Shown here: piece by piece, positions 48,847-54,165 of the stretch
Layout of the letters: each line of letters starts with the position of its first letter
Numbering within the stretch: the stretch's first letter is position 1
IMG/VR virus record: IMGVR_UViG_3300048597_000634
Span: 62,001 to 126,000 of that record
Length of the DNA: 64,000 bases
Reading direction: 5' to 3' (one strand)
Translations under genes and position numbers: made by a program
The notes under the pieces: generated by a model
The model's database searches: none
Told to the model about the DNA's origin: nothing
The model's input: the letters and a program-made list of their open reading frames with translations, nothing else

Positions 48847-49407
48847 TTAATTATTAACATTTAGGACTTGTCCAGTAGCACTTACGATAATGCCGGTGGC
48901 TTCAAATTCTTCTACTGCTTGTAGCAGTCTATTATCTAAACCAAGGCTTATATCTAGTAGAGCTATGTACGGATAGTGGAAGTTAACGTTGGCGCCGCCG
49001 GCGGCTATGGCAGTCATATAAAGAGCCTCGTACTCAGACAGCCCCCACATGACGTAGAGGCCGGCGATTAGACTATGACTTAACTGCTGGTAATTCAACT
49101 GATATACAAACCTCACCAAATCACATTCGTTTAATAGCCGGCTATGTACTTTATACAAAGCGCCTATACAGTCAAAGGCTTCAGTGAAGTAGTCTATCTG
49201 GTCAAATTCATTGTCTAGCTCATATAAGGGGTCTATGACGGGGTCATGGATTATCCCTATGGATAGACTTGGTGTTTGGTCGTCTGGGGGCGGCGGCGCC
49301 CGGTCAAACCCACCCACATAAACCAAGCCTTCTTCATTCTTATGGTTACTGGGTAAGTTTGACCATTGGAAGGTAGTCAGTAATTCTAACCTTGGCAGGC
49401 TAGACAT
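48847..49407 (-). CDS. Possible degenerate protein-tyrosine-phosphatase-like protein
   Basis: C-terminal YIALLDISLGLDNRLLQAV resembles small bacterial PTPs, but the HCxxGxxRS motif is absent. Confidence 0.35.
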   Translation of the reverse strand: MSSLPRLELLTTFQWSNLPSNHKNEEGLVYVGGFDRAPPPPDDQTPSLSIGIIHDPVIDPLYELDNEFDQIDYFTEAFDCIGALYKVHSRLLNECDLVRFVYQLNYQQLSHSLIAGLYVMWGLSEYEALYMTAIAAGGANVNFHYPYIALLDISLGLDNRLLQAVEEFEATGIIVSATGQVLNVNN

Positions 49408-51641
49408 TCATCTCCTCCCCCTTCCGAGTGATAGTTCTGCTTAATCACTTTCTGTTCTAGCTCCTGTTGGCGTTTAGCGGCTAACTGCCCAGACCGCCCC
49501 TCGGCGTTCTGAATAGCTTGTGACCGACAATAATACAACGTCTTTAACCCCAAACGCCAGGCTTCAAAGTGAACCTTAGCAAAATACGTCGGGTCGGGCT
49601 CAGCAGTAAAGAATAGATTCACTGATTGGGACTGTCCCTGTAAATGCCTGTCCATCTCTACCTGACGCTCAGCGGCTTGCTTGACAATAGCCATCTGGTT
49701 AATTTCACGGGCGGTTAGGAATACTTCCCGCTCTAAGTCAGACAAGAACGTCAAGTGTTGTACACTGCCCCGGGCTTCTGTAATAGAATCCCAAGTCTCA
49801 TCGTCATCTTTACCGTACTCAGCTAATACCTTTTGTAAGGTGGGGTTGTGAAAGAACATAGAGCCGCGGCTAGTCTTCTTCTCGAAGCTATTAGCGGCGA
49901 AGGGCTCAATACCAGGGCTAACATGACCACAGATGATTGAGTTAGTTACCGTGGGGGCACATGTCACTGTATGGGTATTGCGAGTGCCTGTACCTTCACA
50001 CCATTCAGGCTCGCCGTATTCTTTATACATGTCGACACTAGCCCGATGGGATTCATCTGCTATATGTCGGAATACAGCTCGATTTAATAAGCTTGCTCCG
50101 AATGATTCGAAGGGTAGGCGGCGCTCTTGTAGTAACGAATGCCATCCCATAGCCCCTAACCCTAACATCCGGCTTTTAACGGCGAAGCGGTAGGCATTAT
50201 CAAAGTACGGCTCACCTTCGATTTTGTCTATGTACTCTTGCATAACGCCATCTAAGAACCATGTAGCCCAATACACCGCGTCAGTCTCCCGCCATTCATC
50301 CCACTTAGCCAAGTTCATAGAACTCAAGCAGCACACGAAGGTATGATTTGGATCGGTGTAGGCGGTAATCTCGCTACAGTTGCCTGTCATCCGTCCATCC
50401 GCCAAAGCAAACATGTTAGTAGTGGGTACAGTGGTGCAATATACAGGCACCGGCTCTTCCATATACACCTTGGCTACCCGTTTAATCAAACCTGTAACCT
50501 TCTTCAGGTGGGTTAATACTTCTAGGAAAGGGTGGTCGATGCGGCGGTATTGCTCGCATAGTTCCCCGGCGGTGACGAACTCTACTTTCTGTGTAGTGCC
50601 AAAACGCCTAACTGGTAGGCGGTGTTCTGGTGTGACATCAATGGTACTATCATCGCCGAAGGTAATACGAATAAAGCGGTCGTTAACACCTTTTTGTTCA
50701 AAGGCATCGTTCTGTACCCAGTCTTTTCCATCCCAGATACTTACTGCCTTACCTACCAGGTCTTTAATGGCCACAGGACCGTCTTTAGTCCTTACCAGTG
50801 CATCCCCTTTAAGGCAGATGTTAGATGTTTTTACTTTCAGTCCTAAGCGGTTATAACCAGGGGGATTAACGCGGTTAACGTTGTCTGTGAAGAACAGATA
50901 AGGCTCGCCGGTTTCAATCCTAGTCCGTAGAATTTGACCAAATAATTCCCGGGCCTCGCCGCCGGCTTGGATAGCCAACATATCTTCATCGGTGAAGCAT
51001 ACAGCATGGTGGATGTTCATACAGCGCTGGTTCTCATCCCCTGTAGGGCGCCGCATGTTAATGAATTCTTTAATGTCTGGGTGGTTAAACGGTAAGTAAA
51101 CCGCCGATGCTCCTTTACGTACCCCGTTTTGGCTAACGCCTACAGTAGTGGAATCTAATATCTTGCACCATGGGATAACACCTTCTGAGATATAACCCCC
51201 GCGGATGGCAGCCCCACGACCTCTAATGTCCCCAGCATAGATGCCAACCCCTGCTCCTTTAGAACTTAAATGAGCTAGCTCAGCAACACCGTGAAATATA
51301 CCACCGAGAGAATCCTCTATGTGTAGGCTGTTACAGCTTATAGGAAAACCACGGGTGGTGCCTAAGTTAGCAAACACTGGGCTAGCTGGTCCAAGCCACC
51401 CAAGCCACATAATCTTAAAGAATCGTTGGGCTAAGTCAGGTCGTTTAAGAGCGCGGGCGGAGGCTTCTGATAACCTCACATAGGCATCCCAGGGGGTCTC
51501 ACCGTCTAATAGATAGCCAGACTTGAGCATATAATAGCCTTCAGCAGTCATCCAATCTGGTACGCCGTTGTCTGGTTTAGTGAAGCCTTCAGTGGTATTG
51601 AATTTGAGATGGGCTTGGGGCAGTCGAGGGAAGATAAACAT
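49386..51641 (-). CDS. nrdA: Class I ribonucleotide reductase alpha subunit, one intein
   Basis: PASPV..N.G, PISC, SNI[intein]CSEI, VCCLSS.N, APT, KTLYY and C-terminal CLACQG motifs. ATG 51641 is preferred to 51758. Confidence 0.95.
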   Translation of the reverse strand: MFIFPRLPQAHLKFNTTEGFTKPDNGVPDWMTAEGYYMLKSGYLLDGETPWDAYVRLSEASARALKRPDLAQRFFKIMWLGWLGPASPVFANLGTTRGFPISCNSLHIEDSLGGIFHGVAELAHLSSKGAGVGIYAGDIRGRGAAIRGGYISEGVIPWCKILDSTTVGVSQNGVRKGASAVYLPFNHPDIKEFINMRRPTGDENQRCMNIHHAVCFTDEDMLAIQAGGEARELFGQILRTRIETGEPYLFFTDNVNRVNPPGYNRLGLKVKTSNICLKGDALVRTKDGPVAIKDLVGKAVSIWDGKDWVQNDAFEQKGVNDRFIRITFGDDSTIDVTPEHRLPVRRFGTTQKVEFVTAGELCEQYRRIDHPFLEVLTHLKKVTGLIKRVAKVYMEEPVPVYCTTVPTTNMFALADGRMTGNCSEITAYTDPNHTFVCCLSSMNLAKWDEWRETDAVYWATWFLDGVMQEYIDKIEGEPYFDNAYRFAVKSRMLGLGAMGWHSLLQERRLPFESFGASLLNRAVFRHIADESHRASVDMYKEYGEPEWCEGTGTRNTHTVTCAPTVTNSIICGHVSPGIEPFAANSFEKKTSRGSMFFHNPTLQKVLAEYGKDDDETWDSITEARGSVQHLTFLSDLEREVFLTAREINQMAIVKQAAERQVEMDRHLQGQSQSVNLFFTAEPDPTYFAKVHFEAWRLGLKTLYYCRSQAIQNAEGRSGQLAAKRQQELEQKVIKQNYHSEGGGDECLACQG
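50379..50816 (-). mobile_element. Mini-intein (146 aa) in NrdA
   Basis: Begins CLKGDALVRT, has block B VTPEHR, ends VYC.TV...TGN before extein C(SEI), the thiyl-radical Cys of the NxCxE motif. Confidence 0.92.
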
Positions 51642-51670
51642 TAGTCTATTAGGCGATATGAAGGAAAGAG

Positions 51671-51692
51671 CGGGCTGATTGCAGTCAGCCCG
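51671..51692 (-). terminator. GCAA-tetraloop hairpin between nrdB and nrdA
   Basis: Minus strand CGGGCTGACT-GCAA-TCAGCCCG followed by CTCTTTCCTT. Confidence 0.5.
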
Positions 51693-51702
51693 GGTTGGTT
51701 GC

Positions 51703-54165
51703 TTAGGCGAATACAGAATCCCAGTCGATGGCTTCGGTATTAAACAGCCCTTTGGCATAGTTAGATACGTGGGCTGCGAAGAAGTCGGTGCTAGCCTCGC
51801 CTCCGGTCATTAGATAAAACCAGCGCTCGATTTGTCTGGCCGCTGCTTTATCTACGTCGAAGATGGGCTCTAAGCCAATCTCCTCTAACTTCTGGTTAGT
51901 GCGCTGCTCAATAAATGACTTCACAATATGAGCGTTAAGTCCAGGCAATTCATGGTTATCAAACACCATGTCAATAAAGTCGTATTCTAAGTCCACTACT
52001 GCCCGGGCAGCTTCGTATAACGTATTGTTTACGTGCTCACTGTTCAAAGATGGAAACTCAGATCGTAGTTGACGGAATAACCAACAACCGGCGTTAGAGT
52101 GCATACAATTCCCACTAATCATCACGGAGTCTTTATACCGTGTGATGAGTGTGCCTTTGTCTACGGTGGCACAATACACGTAGCCAGAATAAGACTTACT
52201 GGTCATTACAGTGCAGCGGATGTTTTTCCACGCTTTGTTGTCATAAATCTTCAGTCCATACTTATAGCCCCGCTTGGGGTCTCTGTAATGTTCGCCGCCG
52301 CGTCCTGATAGGGTACACAACACTTGGACACGGTCTGCTGCCGCCCGGTCATTCGTATAGAACAACTCACAGGTTCTATTAGCTGGCTTACCCCGCCGCC
52401 AAAACCGCAGCTCATGGAAGAATTGGTCAATCCAATTCTGAGTAATATGCGTGAAGACAATCCACTTAAATGACTTGGGTAATAACTGTTCTTCCTTCAG
52501 CTTAATCTGGTAGTTGATAGTGGTCGGGTTATTACGGGTGTAGTACCTTACCCCGGGGATAACGTCTAGCCCAGCCAACACTCCTTCCATTGCCTTAATC
52601 TTGTGCTGCTCTTTCTTCTTAGACAGGGTGATAGTGAGTGTATAAAACCCGTGCTCGTCTTCCATTTCTACTCGACTGCCGATAATCTCAGCAATTAAGT
52701 GAATACGTTCAAGGGCGGTCATAGTCACCTTGGTGCCCTTTACTTTATAGCCGGCAATGGGAATCTCAAACTTGTTCTCTACCCGTAAGTCCTTAGCCTT
52801 TATCTTGTAGGTCTTCTTATTTATCTGGTTATAAATGACCATGTCGTGGTCTTTAGTAACCCTGCATTTTAAAGGCAACTTGCGCTTACCACTTAACTCA
52901 TACATTGACCCGGAGTAACGCTTTTTAACCAGTTGGCTAGGTCTGACATAGCTTATCTCCTCGGTCTCTATGTCGTATTGAGCCAGCAAGTGGTATTCAG
53001 ACAAAGAATCGAACTTAACCCAACCCACATCAGTCAATACCTCTGTATCCGGGCTATGGCATTCATCTCGAACGCTATAGGCAATTACTTCTGATACGCC
53101 CTTTAGCATGTTCTCAGAGGGTAATTCTAAGTAGTTCCCTTTGAGTCCGTATTTGTCGCTGATGTCTTTGTTACCGGCGCGGTCTAGCTCTTTAATCAAC
53201 CCGCGGGCTGAGAAGTATAACAACACAGCAAAGTTGGCGTATAGGCTCACACCTTCGGCAAAAGCAGAGTACACGGCTAGGGATATAGCTCGCTCTTCTA
53301 GGGAATCCCCTGGAGTATTGATAAGATTTTCAATCTTAGCCGCTGCCCTGGGCTCTCTTAAGAACGCATCATATTCCTCTAGGTTCAGCGTCTCGTTTAG
53401 GTAGTTATAAGATTTGGAATGAATGGAGTTGCCGGTGATGGCTACTTTGCCATTACGGCGACATATAACGGTGGTCTTAGGTAAAGATACACAGTAAACG
53501 TAACCTTGATAAGGTTTCTTTGTGGGGGTGGGTAGAGGCTCGAACTCCACATGGTCATCAACCATTGTTGTGGTTAATAGCCGCCCGGCATCTGTAGTAT
53601 CTAGTAAGTCACCAGCTTGAACCTTTAGTAGAATACTATCTGGTCCAGTCACGATTAACATATCGTGGTTAGGTGTCACAAACACATCAATGGTGTCATT
53701 GACGAAGTGAATCATGTTACCCACATAGCGCTCACAAATCAGCTTATTGGGCTTGGCATAGCTAACCTCACAGGTGTTCAAGTCTAGCTGGGCTATCTCA
53801 TGGTCAGTGGTAATCTGAGGGCATGATATCCAACCATCAGTGGTTAGCAGCTCAGTCTCTTGGTCAAAACACTCCATCCCAGCAAAGGTAAACGCCATTA
53901 GGCTAATTTCCGGCTTAGGAAACCATTGAGCCACCTTCTGAGCCCAGTAGTTACCGATGTACAACTCCATCTGTGTGAAGCCTAGTAGCGTGCCGCTGAT
54001 AATCTTTTTCTCTTCTTCGGTCAGCTTAGTCTCCCAGTCATGTACGCTACTTGTCATTACGCACTGTGACCACAACCAATGAGACTGTTGCTGCTTCACG
54101 AAGTACTCGTGGGCTTCTGGGTACTCAAATGGTTGGTAAGACTTCCTTGGTGTAATTAACGTCAT
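51703..54165 (-). CDS. nrdB: Class I ribonucleotide reductase beta subunit, two inteins
   Basis: YQPFEYP, HW, GFTQME, ME[intein]SIHSKSY, EGVSLY..F, RDE[intein]CMH and DFF..HVSNYAK motifs. Confidence 0.95.
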   Translation of the reverse strand: MTLITPRKSYQPFEYPEAHEYFVKQQQSHWLWSQCVMTSSVHDWETKLTEEEKKIISGTLLGFTQMELYIGNYWAQKVAQWFPKPEISLMAFTFAGMECFDQETELLTTDGWISCPQITTDHEIAQLDLNTCEVSYAKPNKLICERYVGNMIHFVNDTIDVFVTPNHDMLIVTGPDSILLKVQAGDLLDTTDAGRLLTTTMVDDHVEFEPLPTPTKKPYQGYVYCVSLPKTTVICRRNGKVAITGNSIHSKSYNYLNETLNLEEYDAFLREPRAAAKIENLINTPGDSLEERAISLAVYSAFAEGVSLYANFAVLLYFSARGLIKELDRAGNKDISDKYGLKGNYLELPSENMLKGVSEVIAYSVRDECHSPDTEVLTDVGWVKFDSLSEYHLLAQYDIETEEISYVRPSQLVKKRYSGSMYELSGKRKLPLKCRVTKDHDMVIYNQINKKTYKIKAKDLRVENKFEIPIAGYKVKGTKVTMTALERIHLIAEIIGSRVEMEDEHGFYTLTITLSKKKEQHKIKAMEGVLAGLDVIPGVRYYTRNNPTTINYQIKLKEEQLLPKSFKWIVFTHITQNWIDQFFHELRFWRRGKPANRTCELFYTNDRAAADRVQVLCTLSGRGGEHYRDPKRGYKYGLKIYDNKAWKNIRCTVMTSKSYSGYVYCATVDKGTLITRYKDSVMISGNCMHSNAGCWLFRQLRSEFPSLNSEHVNNTLYEAARAVVDLEYDFIDMVFDNHELPGLNAHIVKSFIEQRTNQKLEEIGLEPIFDVDKAAARQIERWFYLMTGGEASTDFFAAHVSNYAKGLFNTEAIDWDSVFA
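52108..53061 (-). mobile_element. Intein (318 aa) in NrdB with probable degenerate LAGLIDADG-type endonuclease region
   Basis: CHSPDTEVLTDVGW...VTKDHDM...YSGYVYCATV..G.L..R...SGN|C. The central ~170 aa has FFHELRFW and AADRVQVLCTLSG, reminiscent of DOD blocks. Confidence 0.9.
53428..53871 (-). mobile_element. Mini-intein (148 aa) in NrdB
   Basis: CFDQETELLTTDGW...VTPNHDM...YQGYVYCVS....RRNGKVAITGN|S. Confidence 0.92.

What the first reader, a model, noticed from the sequence alone, without database searches (positions are those of the whole stretch)
52108..53871. Two related inteins at the symmetry-equivalent ExxH motifs of NrdB
Seen: intein 1 splits ME|SIH and intein 2 splits DE|CMH, each right after the Glu. 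Known: these are the two ExxH metal-ligand motifs of the ferritin-like bundle. The inteins share motifs (LT..GW, AQ.D..T.E.SY..P..L...Y.G.M, VT..HDM, Y.GYVYC, GN). Inference: one intein lineage colonised both pseudo-symmetric sites, a rare view of ectopic intein spread within one gene.
Basis: partly seen in the sequence, partly recalled or inferred. Interest (0 to 1): 0.65.

Follow-up and report, generated by a model that had tools for sequence, protein, structure and literature searches.

The report
Two inteins splitting NrdB's metal sites
A 205-kb phage genome encodes a ribonucleotide reductase small subunit interrupted by two self-splicing inteins, one at each iron-binding ExxH motif. Each intein's closest relatives sit at the same site in other phages, so this looks like inherited, decaying selfish elements and not a jump within the gene.

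Summary
The nrdB ORF (window 51703-54165, minus strand, 820 aa) carries a 148-aa mini-intein (B1, 53428-53871) after the Glu of the first ExxH. It carries a 318-aa intein (B2, 52108-53061) after the Glu of the second ExxH. BLASTP finds them alike (E 6e-17).

The inference is only partly supported. The shared motifs are the signature of a very large phage/microbial intein family, which I sampled at more than 30 insertion sites in many genes. B1 and B2 are 33% identical in the splicing domain. That is ordinary for family members at different sites (median 30.6%). B1's ten best matches are all site-a inteins of other NrdBs. B2's best matches are site-b inteins of related phages. The best tree joins B1 to the site-a clade. 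Making B1 and B2 sisters costs 26 lnL units (AU p 0.11), so sisterhood is disfavoured but not rejected.

Both sites are published hot spots. Four other metagenomic NrdBs carry inteins at both sites, and three of these are syntenic or extein-similar relatives. B1 has no endonuclease domain. B2 keeps a LAGLIDADG fold but has lost both catalytic acidic residues.

Verdict: a new member of a known kind, inherited vertically and late in the homing cycle.

The parts
51703..54165 (-). nrdB precursor ORF, 820 aa (354 aa of extein plus two inteins)
   Evidence: Open frame. Pfam Ribonuc_red_sm E 4e-39, matched in three stretches.
53872..54165 (-). N-extein (aa 1-98), ending in the Glu of the first ExxH (..AGME)
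   Evidence: 100% amino-acid identity to the relative P0004.
53428..53871 (-). Intein B1: 148-aa mini-intein with no endonuclease domain. Cys1, TPNH in block B, Cys at F:4, ends TGN, and +1 is Ser.
   Evidence: AF2 pLDDT 89.8, all-beta HINT fold. Foldseek best match is the AceL NrdHF intein 6zgq, TM 0.83. Nearest relatives are site-a NrdB inteins.
53062..53427 (-). Middle extein (aa 247-368), running from SIH..Y (His and the radical Tyr) to ..VRDE
   Evidence: 93% identity to P0004.
53113..53202 (-). 30-aa insertion specific to this lineage inside the middle extein (aa 322-351)
   Evidence: Alignment A3. Present only in this gene, P0004 and P0049.
52777..53061 (-). Intein B2, N-terminal splicing part (aa 369-463): Cys1 and TKDH in block B
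52228..52776 (-). Intein B2, LAGLIDADG-fold endonuclease domain (aa 464-646). Both catalytic acidic residues are lost (..IIGS where the family has ..QADG; ..WRRG where it has ..WDG).
   Evidence: AF2 plus Foldseek matches to TliVMA, PI-PfuI, PI-SceI and I-DmoI. Motif columns are D/E in 127 and D in 123 of 135 inteins, but I and R here. No Pfam endonuclease hit.
52108..52227 (-). Intein B2, C-terminal splicing part (aa 647-686): Cys at F:4, ends SGN, and +1 is Cys
51703..52107 (-). C-extein (aa 687-820 plus the stop codon), starting CMH (the His of the second ExxH)
   Evidence: 92.5% identity to P0004.

Best explanation
The gene encodes a functional class I RNR small subunit that is translated as an 820-aa precursor and has to be matured by two separate protein-splicing events.

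Each intein is an allele of its own site-specific lineage. B1 belongs to the 'site a' lineage (E|S/T/C-x-H at the first ExxH). B2 belongs to a 'site b' lineage (E|C/S-x-H at the second ExxH). Both lineages are branches of one very large family of phage and microbial inteins. The family is marked by Cys1, His at B:10, Cys at F:4 and a C-terminal Gly-Asn, and most members carry a LAGLIDADG homing endonuclease.

The two inteins most likely entered an ancestor of this phage group by ordinary homing from other NrdB alleles. They were then inherited vertically, and they are now late in the homing cycle. B1 has no endonuclease domain. B2 keeps the fold but has lost both catalytic acidic residues.

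The two ExxH motifs are hit repeatedly for three reasons. They are the most conserved and least dispensable parts of the gene. They naturally offer a Ser, Thr or Cys right after the Glu to serve as the +1 nucleophile. Imprecise loss of an intein there would destroy the metal site.

Shown here: the anatomy, family membership, nearest relatives, synteny, extein conservation and loss of the endonuclease motifs. Inferred: splicing competence, how the inteins were acquired, and that the endonuclease is inactive.
For: Anatomy and folds.

Site-specific kinship:
- B1 is 38-46% identical in the splicing domain (45-48% over BLASTP's N-terminal half) to site-a inteins of other NrdBs, and 60% and 49% to those of its close relatives. 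It is 33% identical to B2.
- B2 groups with the site-b inteins of P0004, P0049, P0033 and P0050, with support 95/99 and 98.
- The tree that joins the B1 group to the site-a core has the highest likelihood: -30521.0 against -30527.1 for the free search and -30547.1 for B1 and B2 as sisters.

Vertical inheritance: L006 (P0004) and L007 (P0033) are syntenic (primase ... PD-(D/E)XK nuclease ... nrdB-nrdA). The L006 genome region is about 73% identical in DNA. Its exteins are 92-100% identical in protein and its inteins 60-65%, with the same mini and decayed states. P0049 (exteins 87% identical) has the mini site-a intein but an intact site-b endonuclease. P0050 has site b only.

Endonuclease decay. 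The B2 endonuclease part is only 26% identical to that of P0033, against 48% for the splicing part.

Hot spots: PMC8772380 reports that R2 inteins and introns cluster at the two metal-ligand regions. CB7 has an intein at site a and an HNH intron beside site b. Intein-free relatives read E-S/T-x-H at site b.

Function retained: all metal ligands and the Tyr are present, and the exteins are strongly conserved.
Against: The backbone of the intein tree is unresolved. AU tests do not reject B1 plus B2 as sisters (p 0.11) or a single clade of all NrdB inteins (p 0.15).

In the careful mixture-model tree, the B1 group sits in a polytomy and is not inside the site-a core. Its placement rests on only about 148 columns.

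The B2 of this gene is only 35% identical to the site-b intein of P0049, although the exteins are 87% identical. Strict vertical descent therefore needs either very fast decay or an allele replacement in one of the lines.

Splicing and endonuclease activity were not measured.
Confidence: 0.65

Rival explanations
1. Recent ectopic spread within the gene. On this view, one of the two inteins in this phage lineage was copied from the other into the pseudo-symmetric ExxH site.
For: The two inteins belong to the same family, and the pairwise similarity is significant. The two target sites share 15 of 36 nt in this gene and 17 of 36 in P0033, against a background of 9 +/- 2.7, which puts them in the top 2.6%. 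The AU test does not formally reject B1 and B2 as sisters (p 0.11).
Against: B1-B2 identity (33%) is at the family background level. Each intein has many closer relatives at its own site in other NrdBs. The sister topology is 26 lnL units worse, with RELL 0.04. Site-a-only and site-b-only NrdBs exist with the same lineages (P0007-P0015, P0050, P0034). The target-site similarity comes almost entirely from the conserved E-x-x-H-S codons.
Confidence: 0.07
2. Ancient radiation within NrdB. On this view, all NrdB-hosted inteins of this family descend from one colonisation of nrdB, and their endonuclease later retargeted between the two ExxH motifs. The lineages concerned are site a1, a second site-a lineage a2 (CB7, C-ZP2022, L039), a site after the His (L029), site b, and site b' one codon later (PA-SR01, PTm1, Aquifex).
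For: NrdB labels cluster on the tree far more than shuffled labels do. Site a is occupied by at least two distinct clades, and a2 falls with the site-b, b', helicase and NrdA group. The nearest endonuclease domain to P0033's site-b intein is a site-a one (C-ZP2022, 38%), followed by b' (34-36%), CB7 (33%) and L029 (33%). Monophyly of all NrdB inteins is not rejected (AU p 0.15).
Against: That topology is 25.7 lnL units worse than the best tree. Helicase (DE|CH), NrdA and NAMPT inteins interleave with the NrdB ones. Mean a1-b identity (33.6%) is only about 2.5 points above a1-other and b-other. Sampling was seeded with the NrdB inteins themselves, which biases the set towards their neighbours.
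Confidence: 0.2
3. Domesticated regulatory inteins. On this view, the two inteins are kept because they make assembly of the di-iron site conditional, for example on redox state or metal supply, or because they help iron loading.
For: For Aquifex R2, the intein-containing construct gave higher iron occupancy and twice the activity (PMC8772380). Both inteins persist after endonuclease loss or decay, with their splicing parts better conserved than the endonuclease part: 70-80% against 60%. Cys1, Cys F:4 and, in B2, Cys+1 could form disulfides.
Against: Persistence of the splicing function is expected for any intein in an essential site, because precise deletion is rare. The inteins evolve much faster than the exteins. 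The 80 nearest IMG/VR NrdBs do without inteins. There is no direct evidence here.
Confidence: 0.08

Closest known systems
Aquifex aeolicus R2 (RIR2) intein and the R2 inteins of Pseudanabaena phage PA-SR01 and Tenacibaculum phage PTm1
   Same: All are inteins inside the second ExxH of NrdB and carry a LAGLIDADG endonuclease. They belong to the same sequence family: PA-SR01 and PTm1 align end to end with B2 at 27-28% identity. The C-terminal block of the Aquifex intein printed in the paper's supplement resembles that of B2. All have a Gly-Asn C-terminus without the penultimate His.
   Different: Those inteins sit one codon later (E-x|C-H, between Leu229 and Cys230 in Aquifex), whereas B2 sits directly after the Glu (E|C-x-H). 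Their endonuclease motifs are intact and those of B2 are not.
Site-a NrdB inteins of Pectobacterium phages CB7 and phiTE and Vibrio phage C-ZP2022
   Same: Identical insertion point (E|T-I-H, compared with E|S-I-H here) and the same intein family. CB7 also carries a second selfish element, an HNH group I intron, beside the second ExxH.
   Different: They form a separate clade (a2, support 99/95) that is about 26-27% identical to B1. B1 goes with the metagenomic a1 clade. They are full-length, and B1 is a mini-intein.
Metagenomic NrdBs P0004, P0049, P0033 and P0005
   Same: All have both ExxH sites occupied by inteins of the same two lineages. P0004 and P0033 are syntenic with this window and P0049 has 87% identical exteins.
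   Different: P0033 has a third, unrelated LAGLIDADG_3 intein near the N-terminus. Its site-b endonuclease motifs are intact, while its site-a intein has lost the second motif's Asp. P0049 has an intact site-b endonuclease. P0005 is a different NrdB subgroup in which site b holds the mini-intein and site a the decayed long one.
AceL NrdHF class 3 split intein (PDB 6zgq)
   Same: It is the only PDB sequence match of the site-a profile (E 1e-10) and the best fold match of B1 (TM 0.83). It shares Met at B:12, Cys at F:4 and Thr at G:5, and lacks the penultimate His.
   Different: It starts with Ala and is naturally split. B1 and B2 keep Cys1 and are contiguous, so they do not meet the definition of class 3.

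Membership tests
Intein (HINT-fold protein-splicing element), class 1 | In-frame insertion in a conserved host motif, with the host frame continuing on both sides | tested here: met
   Removing the inserts restores E-x-x-H at both motifs.
Intein (HINT-fold protein-splicing element), class 1 | Cys/Ser/Thr at position 1, TxxH in block B, C-terminal Asn, and Cys/Ser/Thr at +1 | tested here: met
   B1 has C1, TPNH..GN and +1 Ser. B2 has C1, TKDH..GN and +1 Cys.
Intein (HINT-fold protein-splicing element), class 1 | HINT fold | tested here: met
   AF2 pLDDT 89.8 and 94.7. Foldseek matches to many solved inteins.
Intein (HINT-fold protein-splicing element), class 1 | Asp at block F:4 and His at the penultimate position G:6 (typical of class 1, not obligatory) | tested here: not met
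   F:4 is Cys and G:6 is Gly in B1, in B2 and in 132 of 135 family members.
Intein (HINT-fold protein-splicing element), class 1 | Actual protein splicing | not testable with these tools
   Inferred from intact catalytic residues and from strong conservation of the exteins.
Class 3 intein | No N-terminal nucleophile | tested here: not met
   Cys1 is present in both inteins and in 135 of 135 family members.
Class 3 intein | WCT triplet (Trp B:12, Cys F:4, Thr G:5) | tested here: inconclusive
   B1 has M-C-T and B2 has M-C-S. M-C-T is the variant triplet of the experimentally confirmed class 3 AceL NrdHF intein.
LAGLIDADG homing endonuclease (middle domain of B2) | Two-fold alpha-beta-beta-alpha-beta-beta-alpha fold | tested here: met
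   Foldseek matches to TliVMA, PI-PfuI, PI-SceI and I-DmoI. Pfam models do not detect it.
LAGLIDADG homing endonuclease (middle domain of B2) | An acidic residue at the end of each LAGLIDADG helix | tested here: not met
   Ile and Arg stand where 127 and 123 of 135 family members have Asp or Glu.
NrdB site-a intein allele | Insertion directly after the Glu of the first ExxH | tested here: met
   B1 reads ..ME|SIH. The same point is used in P0007-P0015, L009, L022, CB7 and C-ZP2022.
NrdB site-a intein allele | Closest sequence relatives are inteins at the same site | tested here: met
   The top ten matches are all site-a inteins. The best likelihood tree agrees. In the careful tree the placement is unresolved.
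Aae RIR2-type intein allele (second ExxH) | Insertion between x and Cys in E-x|C-H | tested here: not met
   B2 sits one codon upstream, at E|C-M-H. The B2-type point is shared with P0004, P0049, P0033, P0050, P0034 and P0005. PA-SR01, PTm1, L008, L013 and L016 use E-x|C-H.
Class I RNR small subunit (NrdB, ferritin-like di-iron) | Metal ligands (Asp/Glu, ExxH, Glu, ExxH) and the radical Tyr present after splicing | tested here: met
   TQME, ME-SIH..SY, FAEG and DE-CMH are all found. Pfam PF00268 matches.

The most novel reading that the evidence does not exclude
The NrdB-hosted inteins of this family are one radiation in which a LAGLIDADG endonuclease lineage repeatedly retargeted between the two pseudo-symmetric E-(S/T/C)-x-H metal-ligand motifs. 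The sites involved are a, a site after the His, b and b'. On this reading the doubly occupied genes, including this one, are the record of that site switching. A second unexcluded point is that the whole family keeps both Cys1 and the class-3-type Cys at F:4, so it may splice by a hybrid or switchable route.
Probability: 0.2. Interest if true: 0.55.

Novelty: new member of a known kind. Interest (0 to 1): 0.3.

Why it matters
Inteins at the R2 metal sites are already known, and the Aquifex case suggests they can affect iron loading. This gene, and the four other doubly occupied genes found here, would be a convenient natural system for two questions. The first is whether two inteins must splice in a set order before a di-iron site can form. 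The second is whether related homing endonucleases can cross-recognise the two pseudo-symmetric targets. As a genome feature, though, it is an expected outcome of the homing cycle in a phage rich in inteins: nrdA and the DNA ligase gene carry inteins too. It does not show intein movement within a gene.

Tried and rejected
- blastn of the gene against the phage collection found nothing.
- Pfam does not recognise the endonuclease domain of this family. The fold had to be shown by structure prediction.
- The scan of cellular genomes with the site-b profile returned 80 inteins of the family, none of them in NrdB. Its single search pattern would also miss the Aquifex intein.
- treekit's AU test under the mixture model did not finish in the time allowed. 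A full IQ-TREE search on 71 rows timed out, and one script was cut off. The AU tests reported therefore use 51 rows under LG+G4 with a shortened search. In that run the constrained tree beat the free search, which shows the search was not exhaustive.
- A phmmer search of B2 against PDB sequences found nothing.
- I considered and dropped the idea that the short linker of B1 is a remnant of the second LAGLIDADG helix. It rests on one MAFFT placement of about 18 residues.
- Database searches of the exteins were done piece by piece by reference (P0001:247-368, alignment A3). Joined exteins were made only inside the local script box, to build a classification HMM and to compute identities.
Full report
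WHAT IS THERE

The window is part of a 205,544-bp IMG/VR virus record. On the minus strand, 51703-54165 is one open frame of 820 aa. Pfam matches the RNR small-chain model in three separate stretches and gives a sub-threshold intein match.

Two inserts interrupt the host protein:
- B1 is aa 99-246 (nt 53428-53871, 148 aa). It lies between ..AGME and SIHSKSY.
- B2 is aa 369-686 (nt 52108-53061, 318 aa). It lies between ..VRDE and CMHSNA.

Without the inserts the protein has 354 aa and carries every NrdB ligand: TQME, ME-SIH..SY, FAEG and DE-CMH.

Both inserts start with Cys, have TxxH in block B and end in Gly-Asn followed by Ser (B1) or Cys (B2). AlphaFold models are confident. B2 (pLDDT 94.7) matches solved inteins that carry a LAGLIDADG endonuclease, namely TliVMA, PI-PfuI, PI-SceI and I-DmoI. 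B1 (pLDDT 89.8) is a bare HINT fold whose best match is the AceL NrdHF intein at TM 0.83.

BLASTP of B1 against B2 gives 34% identity over 92 aa (E 6e-17) and 50% over 32 aa. The 146-aa mini-intein in the adjacent nrdA (SNI|CSEI, nt 50379-50816) shares only a short C-terminal block.

THE FAMILY

tblastn against cultured phages found the same kind of intein in many host genes:
- NrdB: PA-SR01, PTm1, CB7, phiTE and C-ZP2022.
- NrdA: T5-like phages and Staphylococcus phages.
- Others: NAMPT, terminase, ThyX, RtcB and more.

Word searches of the large protein set, an IMG/VR scan and a scan of cellular genomes each returned dozens more. IMG/VR alone holds at least 279 relatives. I extracted 135 inteins from more than 30 insertion sites.

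Across all 135, Cys1 and His B:10 are invariant. Cys stands at block F:4 in 132, Gly at the penultimate position in 132, and Asn at the end in 130.

WHO IS CLOSEST TO WHOM

I compared identities over the 148 columns that B1 and B2 share.
- B1's ten best matches are all site-a NrdB inteins: 60% to P0004, 38-46% to the others. B2 ranks 36th of 134, at 33.1%.
- B2's best matches are the site-b inteins of P0004 (72%) and P0033 (48%). B1 ranks 25th.
- Among 8,953 pairs of family members at different sites, the median identity is 30.6% and the 95th percentile is 40.5%. The B1-B2 value lies at the 70th percentile.

The careful tree (71 inteins, 310 columns, LG+C20+F+G4 by PMSF) recovers three supported NrdB clades:
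- a site-a core clade (97/100);
- a site-b clade of B2, P0004 and P0033 (95/99);
- a second, separate site-a clade of CB7, C-ZP2022 and L039 (99/95).

The backbone of that tree is open, and the B1 group (100/100) sits in a polytomy.

A joint AU test on 51 inteins gave these results:

| Topology | lnL | p-AU |
|---|---|---|
| B1 group + site-a core | -30521.0 | 0.73 |
| Free search | -30527.1 | 0.52 |
| B1 group sister to B2 group | -30547.1 | 0.11 (RELL 0.04) |
| All NrdB inteins as one clade | -30546.7 | 0.15 |

The data therefore favour B1 being a site-a allele and B2 a site-b allele. They give no sign of a special B1-B2 tie, but they cannot formally exclude one.

RELATIVES OF THIS GENE

- P0004 (819 aa) lies on a syntenic 97-kb contig whose DNA in this region is about 73% identical. 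Its exteins are 92-100% identical in protein. Its inteins are 60% (B1) and 65% (B2) identical, with the same mini and decayed states.
- P0049 has exteins 87% identical. It has the mini site-a intein but a site-b intein with both endonuclease motifs intact.
- P0050 carries only the site-b intein.
- P0033 is syntenic and has three inteins: an unrelated LAGLIDADG_3 intein near the N-terminus plus full-length site-a and site-b inteins.
- P0005 is a different NrdB subgroup and also has both sites filled.

In B2 and in P0004's site-b intein, the residues closing the two LAGLIDADG helices are Ile and Arg. At those columns, 127 and 123 of the 135 inteins have Asp or Glu. B2's endonuclease part is only 26% identical to that of P0033, against 48% for the splicing part.

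This pattern is what the homing cycle predicts: invasion, fixation, decay of the endonuclease, then shortening to a mini-intein.

One observation does not fit simple descent. B2 is only 35% identical to P0049's site-b intein, although the exteins are 87% identical. Either the decayed copy diverged very fast, or one line had its allele replaced.

HOW COMMON, AND WHAT WAS KNOWN

A scan of IMG/VR with the middle-extein profile found at least 516 NrdB relatives. The 80 best are all uninterrupted. Occupancy is therefore rare in this subgroup.

The sites themselves are known. Rehling et al. (PMC8772380) state that inteins and group I introns in R2 genes lie near the two metal-ligand regions. They list the Pectobacterium, Pseudanabaena, Tenacibaculum and Corynebacterium phage cases, and they place the Aquifex intein between Leu229 and Cys230 of E-L-C-H. 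PA-SR01 and PTm1 use that same point (E-x|C-H). B2 and its clade sit one codon earlier, at E|C-x-H.

CB7 has an intein at site a and an HNH intron beside site b. Two inteins at both motifs of one gene were not described in the papers I could search.

It is general knowledge that allelic inteins are usually closer to each other than to non-allelic inteins of the same genome, and that ectopic moves are very rare (PMC1635734). The present case follows that rule.

WHAT STILL SPEAKS FOR SITE SWITCHING, AT A DEEPER LEVEL

- Site a is held by at least two clades.
- The endonuclease domain nearest to P0033's site-b intein belongs to a site-a intein (C-ZP2022, 38%). It is followed by b' inteins and by L029, which sits after the His.
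- NrdB labels cluster on the tree.
- The two target sites share 15-17 of 36 nt, against a background of 9 +/- 2.7. Nearly all of the excess lies in the E-x-x-H-S codons.
- Against this, helicase (DE|CH), NrdA and NAMPT inteins interleave with the NrdB ones.

I give this reading about 0.2.

MECHANISM

Shown: the anatomy, the catalytic residues and the folds.

Inferred: each intein splices on its own. The steps are an acyl shift at Cys1 (or attack by Cys F:4), transfer to Ser247 or Cys687, cyclisation of Asn246 or Asn686, and a final shift to a peptide bond. The di-iron site cannot form until both events are done, because each Glu is separated from its His by 148 or 318 residues.

Because the family keeps both Cys1 and the class-3-type Cys F:4 (M-C-T in B1, as in the class 3 AceL NrdHF intein), the starting nucleophile cannot be read from the sequence.

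VERDICT

This is a real double intein. It is a new member of known kinds, inherited and decaying, and not evidence of spread within the gene.

Noticed in passing
window 52108-53871 and all 135 related inteins: The whole intein family keeps Cys1 (135/135) together with Cys at block F:4 (132/135; class 1 inteins usually have Asp there) and Gly-Asn at the C-terminus. B1 has Met/Cys/Thr at B:12/F:4/G:5. That is the variant 'MCT' triplet of the class 3 AceL NrdHF split intein, which is also the only PDB sequence hit and the best fold match. Which cysteine starts splicing is open.
   Followed up: partly
window 50379-50816 (minus strand), inside nrdA 49386-51758: nrdA carries a 146-aa mini-intein between SNI and CSEI, so the active-site Cys serves as the +1 residue. 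It is not related to B1 or B2 beyond a short C-terminal block. The listed nrdA ORF start overlaps the end of nrdB. A later Met (about 51641) fits the 753-aa homologue in L006.
   Followed up: partly
L001 787-3057 (G000:C1 about 151496-153766, outside the window): A DNA ligase gene with a LAGLIDADG intein inserted right after the KLDG adenylation motif (KLDG|C ... HN|C). This is the fourth intein of this phage genome.
   Followed up: no
window 53113-53202 (minus strand): A 30-aa insertion (aa 322-351) in the NrdB middle extein, shared only with the close relatives P0004 and P0049 and absent from all other NrdBs aligned.
   Followed up: no
L004 (Pectobacterium phage CB7) 1153-3966: CB7 nrdB has an intein at site a. 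The gene is also cut again just before the second ExxH by an HNH endonuclease gene, reported as a splicing group I intron in PMC7344957. So both metal-site regions of one gene are occupied by different kinds of selfish element.
   Followed up: partly
P0006; L007 9880-13788: An NrdD (P0006, 1420 aa) holds three inteins of this same family. The nrdA next to P0033 (1302 aa) has several intein and endonuclease Pfam hits. Multi-intein RNR genes are frequent in these metagenomic phages.
   Followed up: no
P0049 versus window 52108-53061: B2 is only 35% identical to the site-b intein of P0049 although the exteins are 87% identical. P0049's intein is 55% identical to that of the much more distant P0033. 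This means either very fast divergence after endonuclease decay or an allele replacement by homing.
   Followed up: partly
L014, L017, L019, L024, L027, L048, P0041-P0047: Many inteins of the same subgroup sit in the DE|CH (DExH) motif of helicases. That local sequence is almost the same as the NrdB site-b context (RDE|C.H).
   Followed up: no
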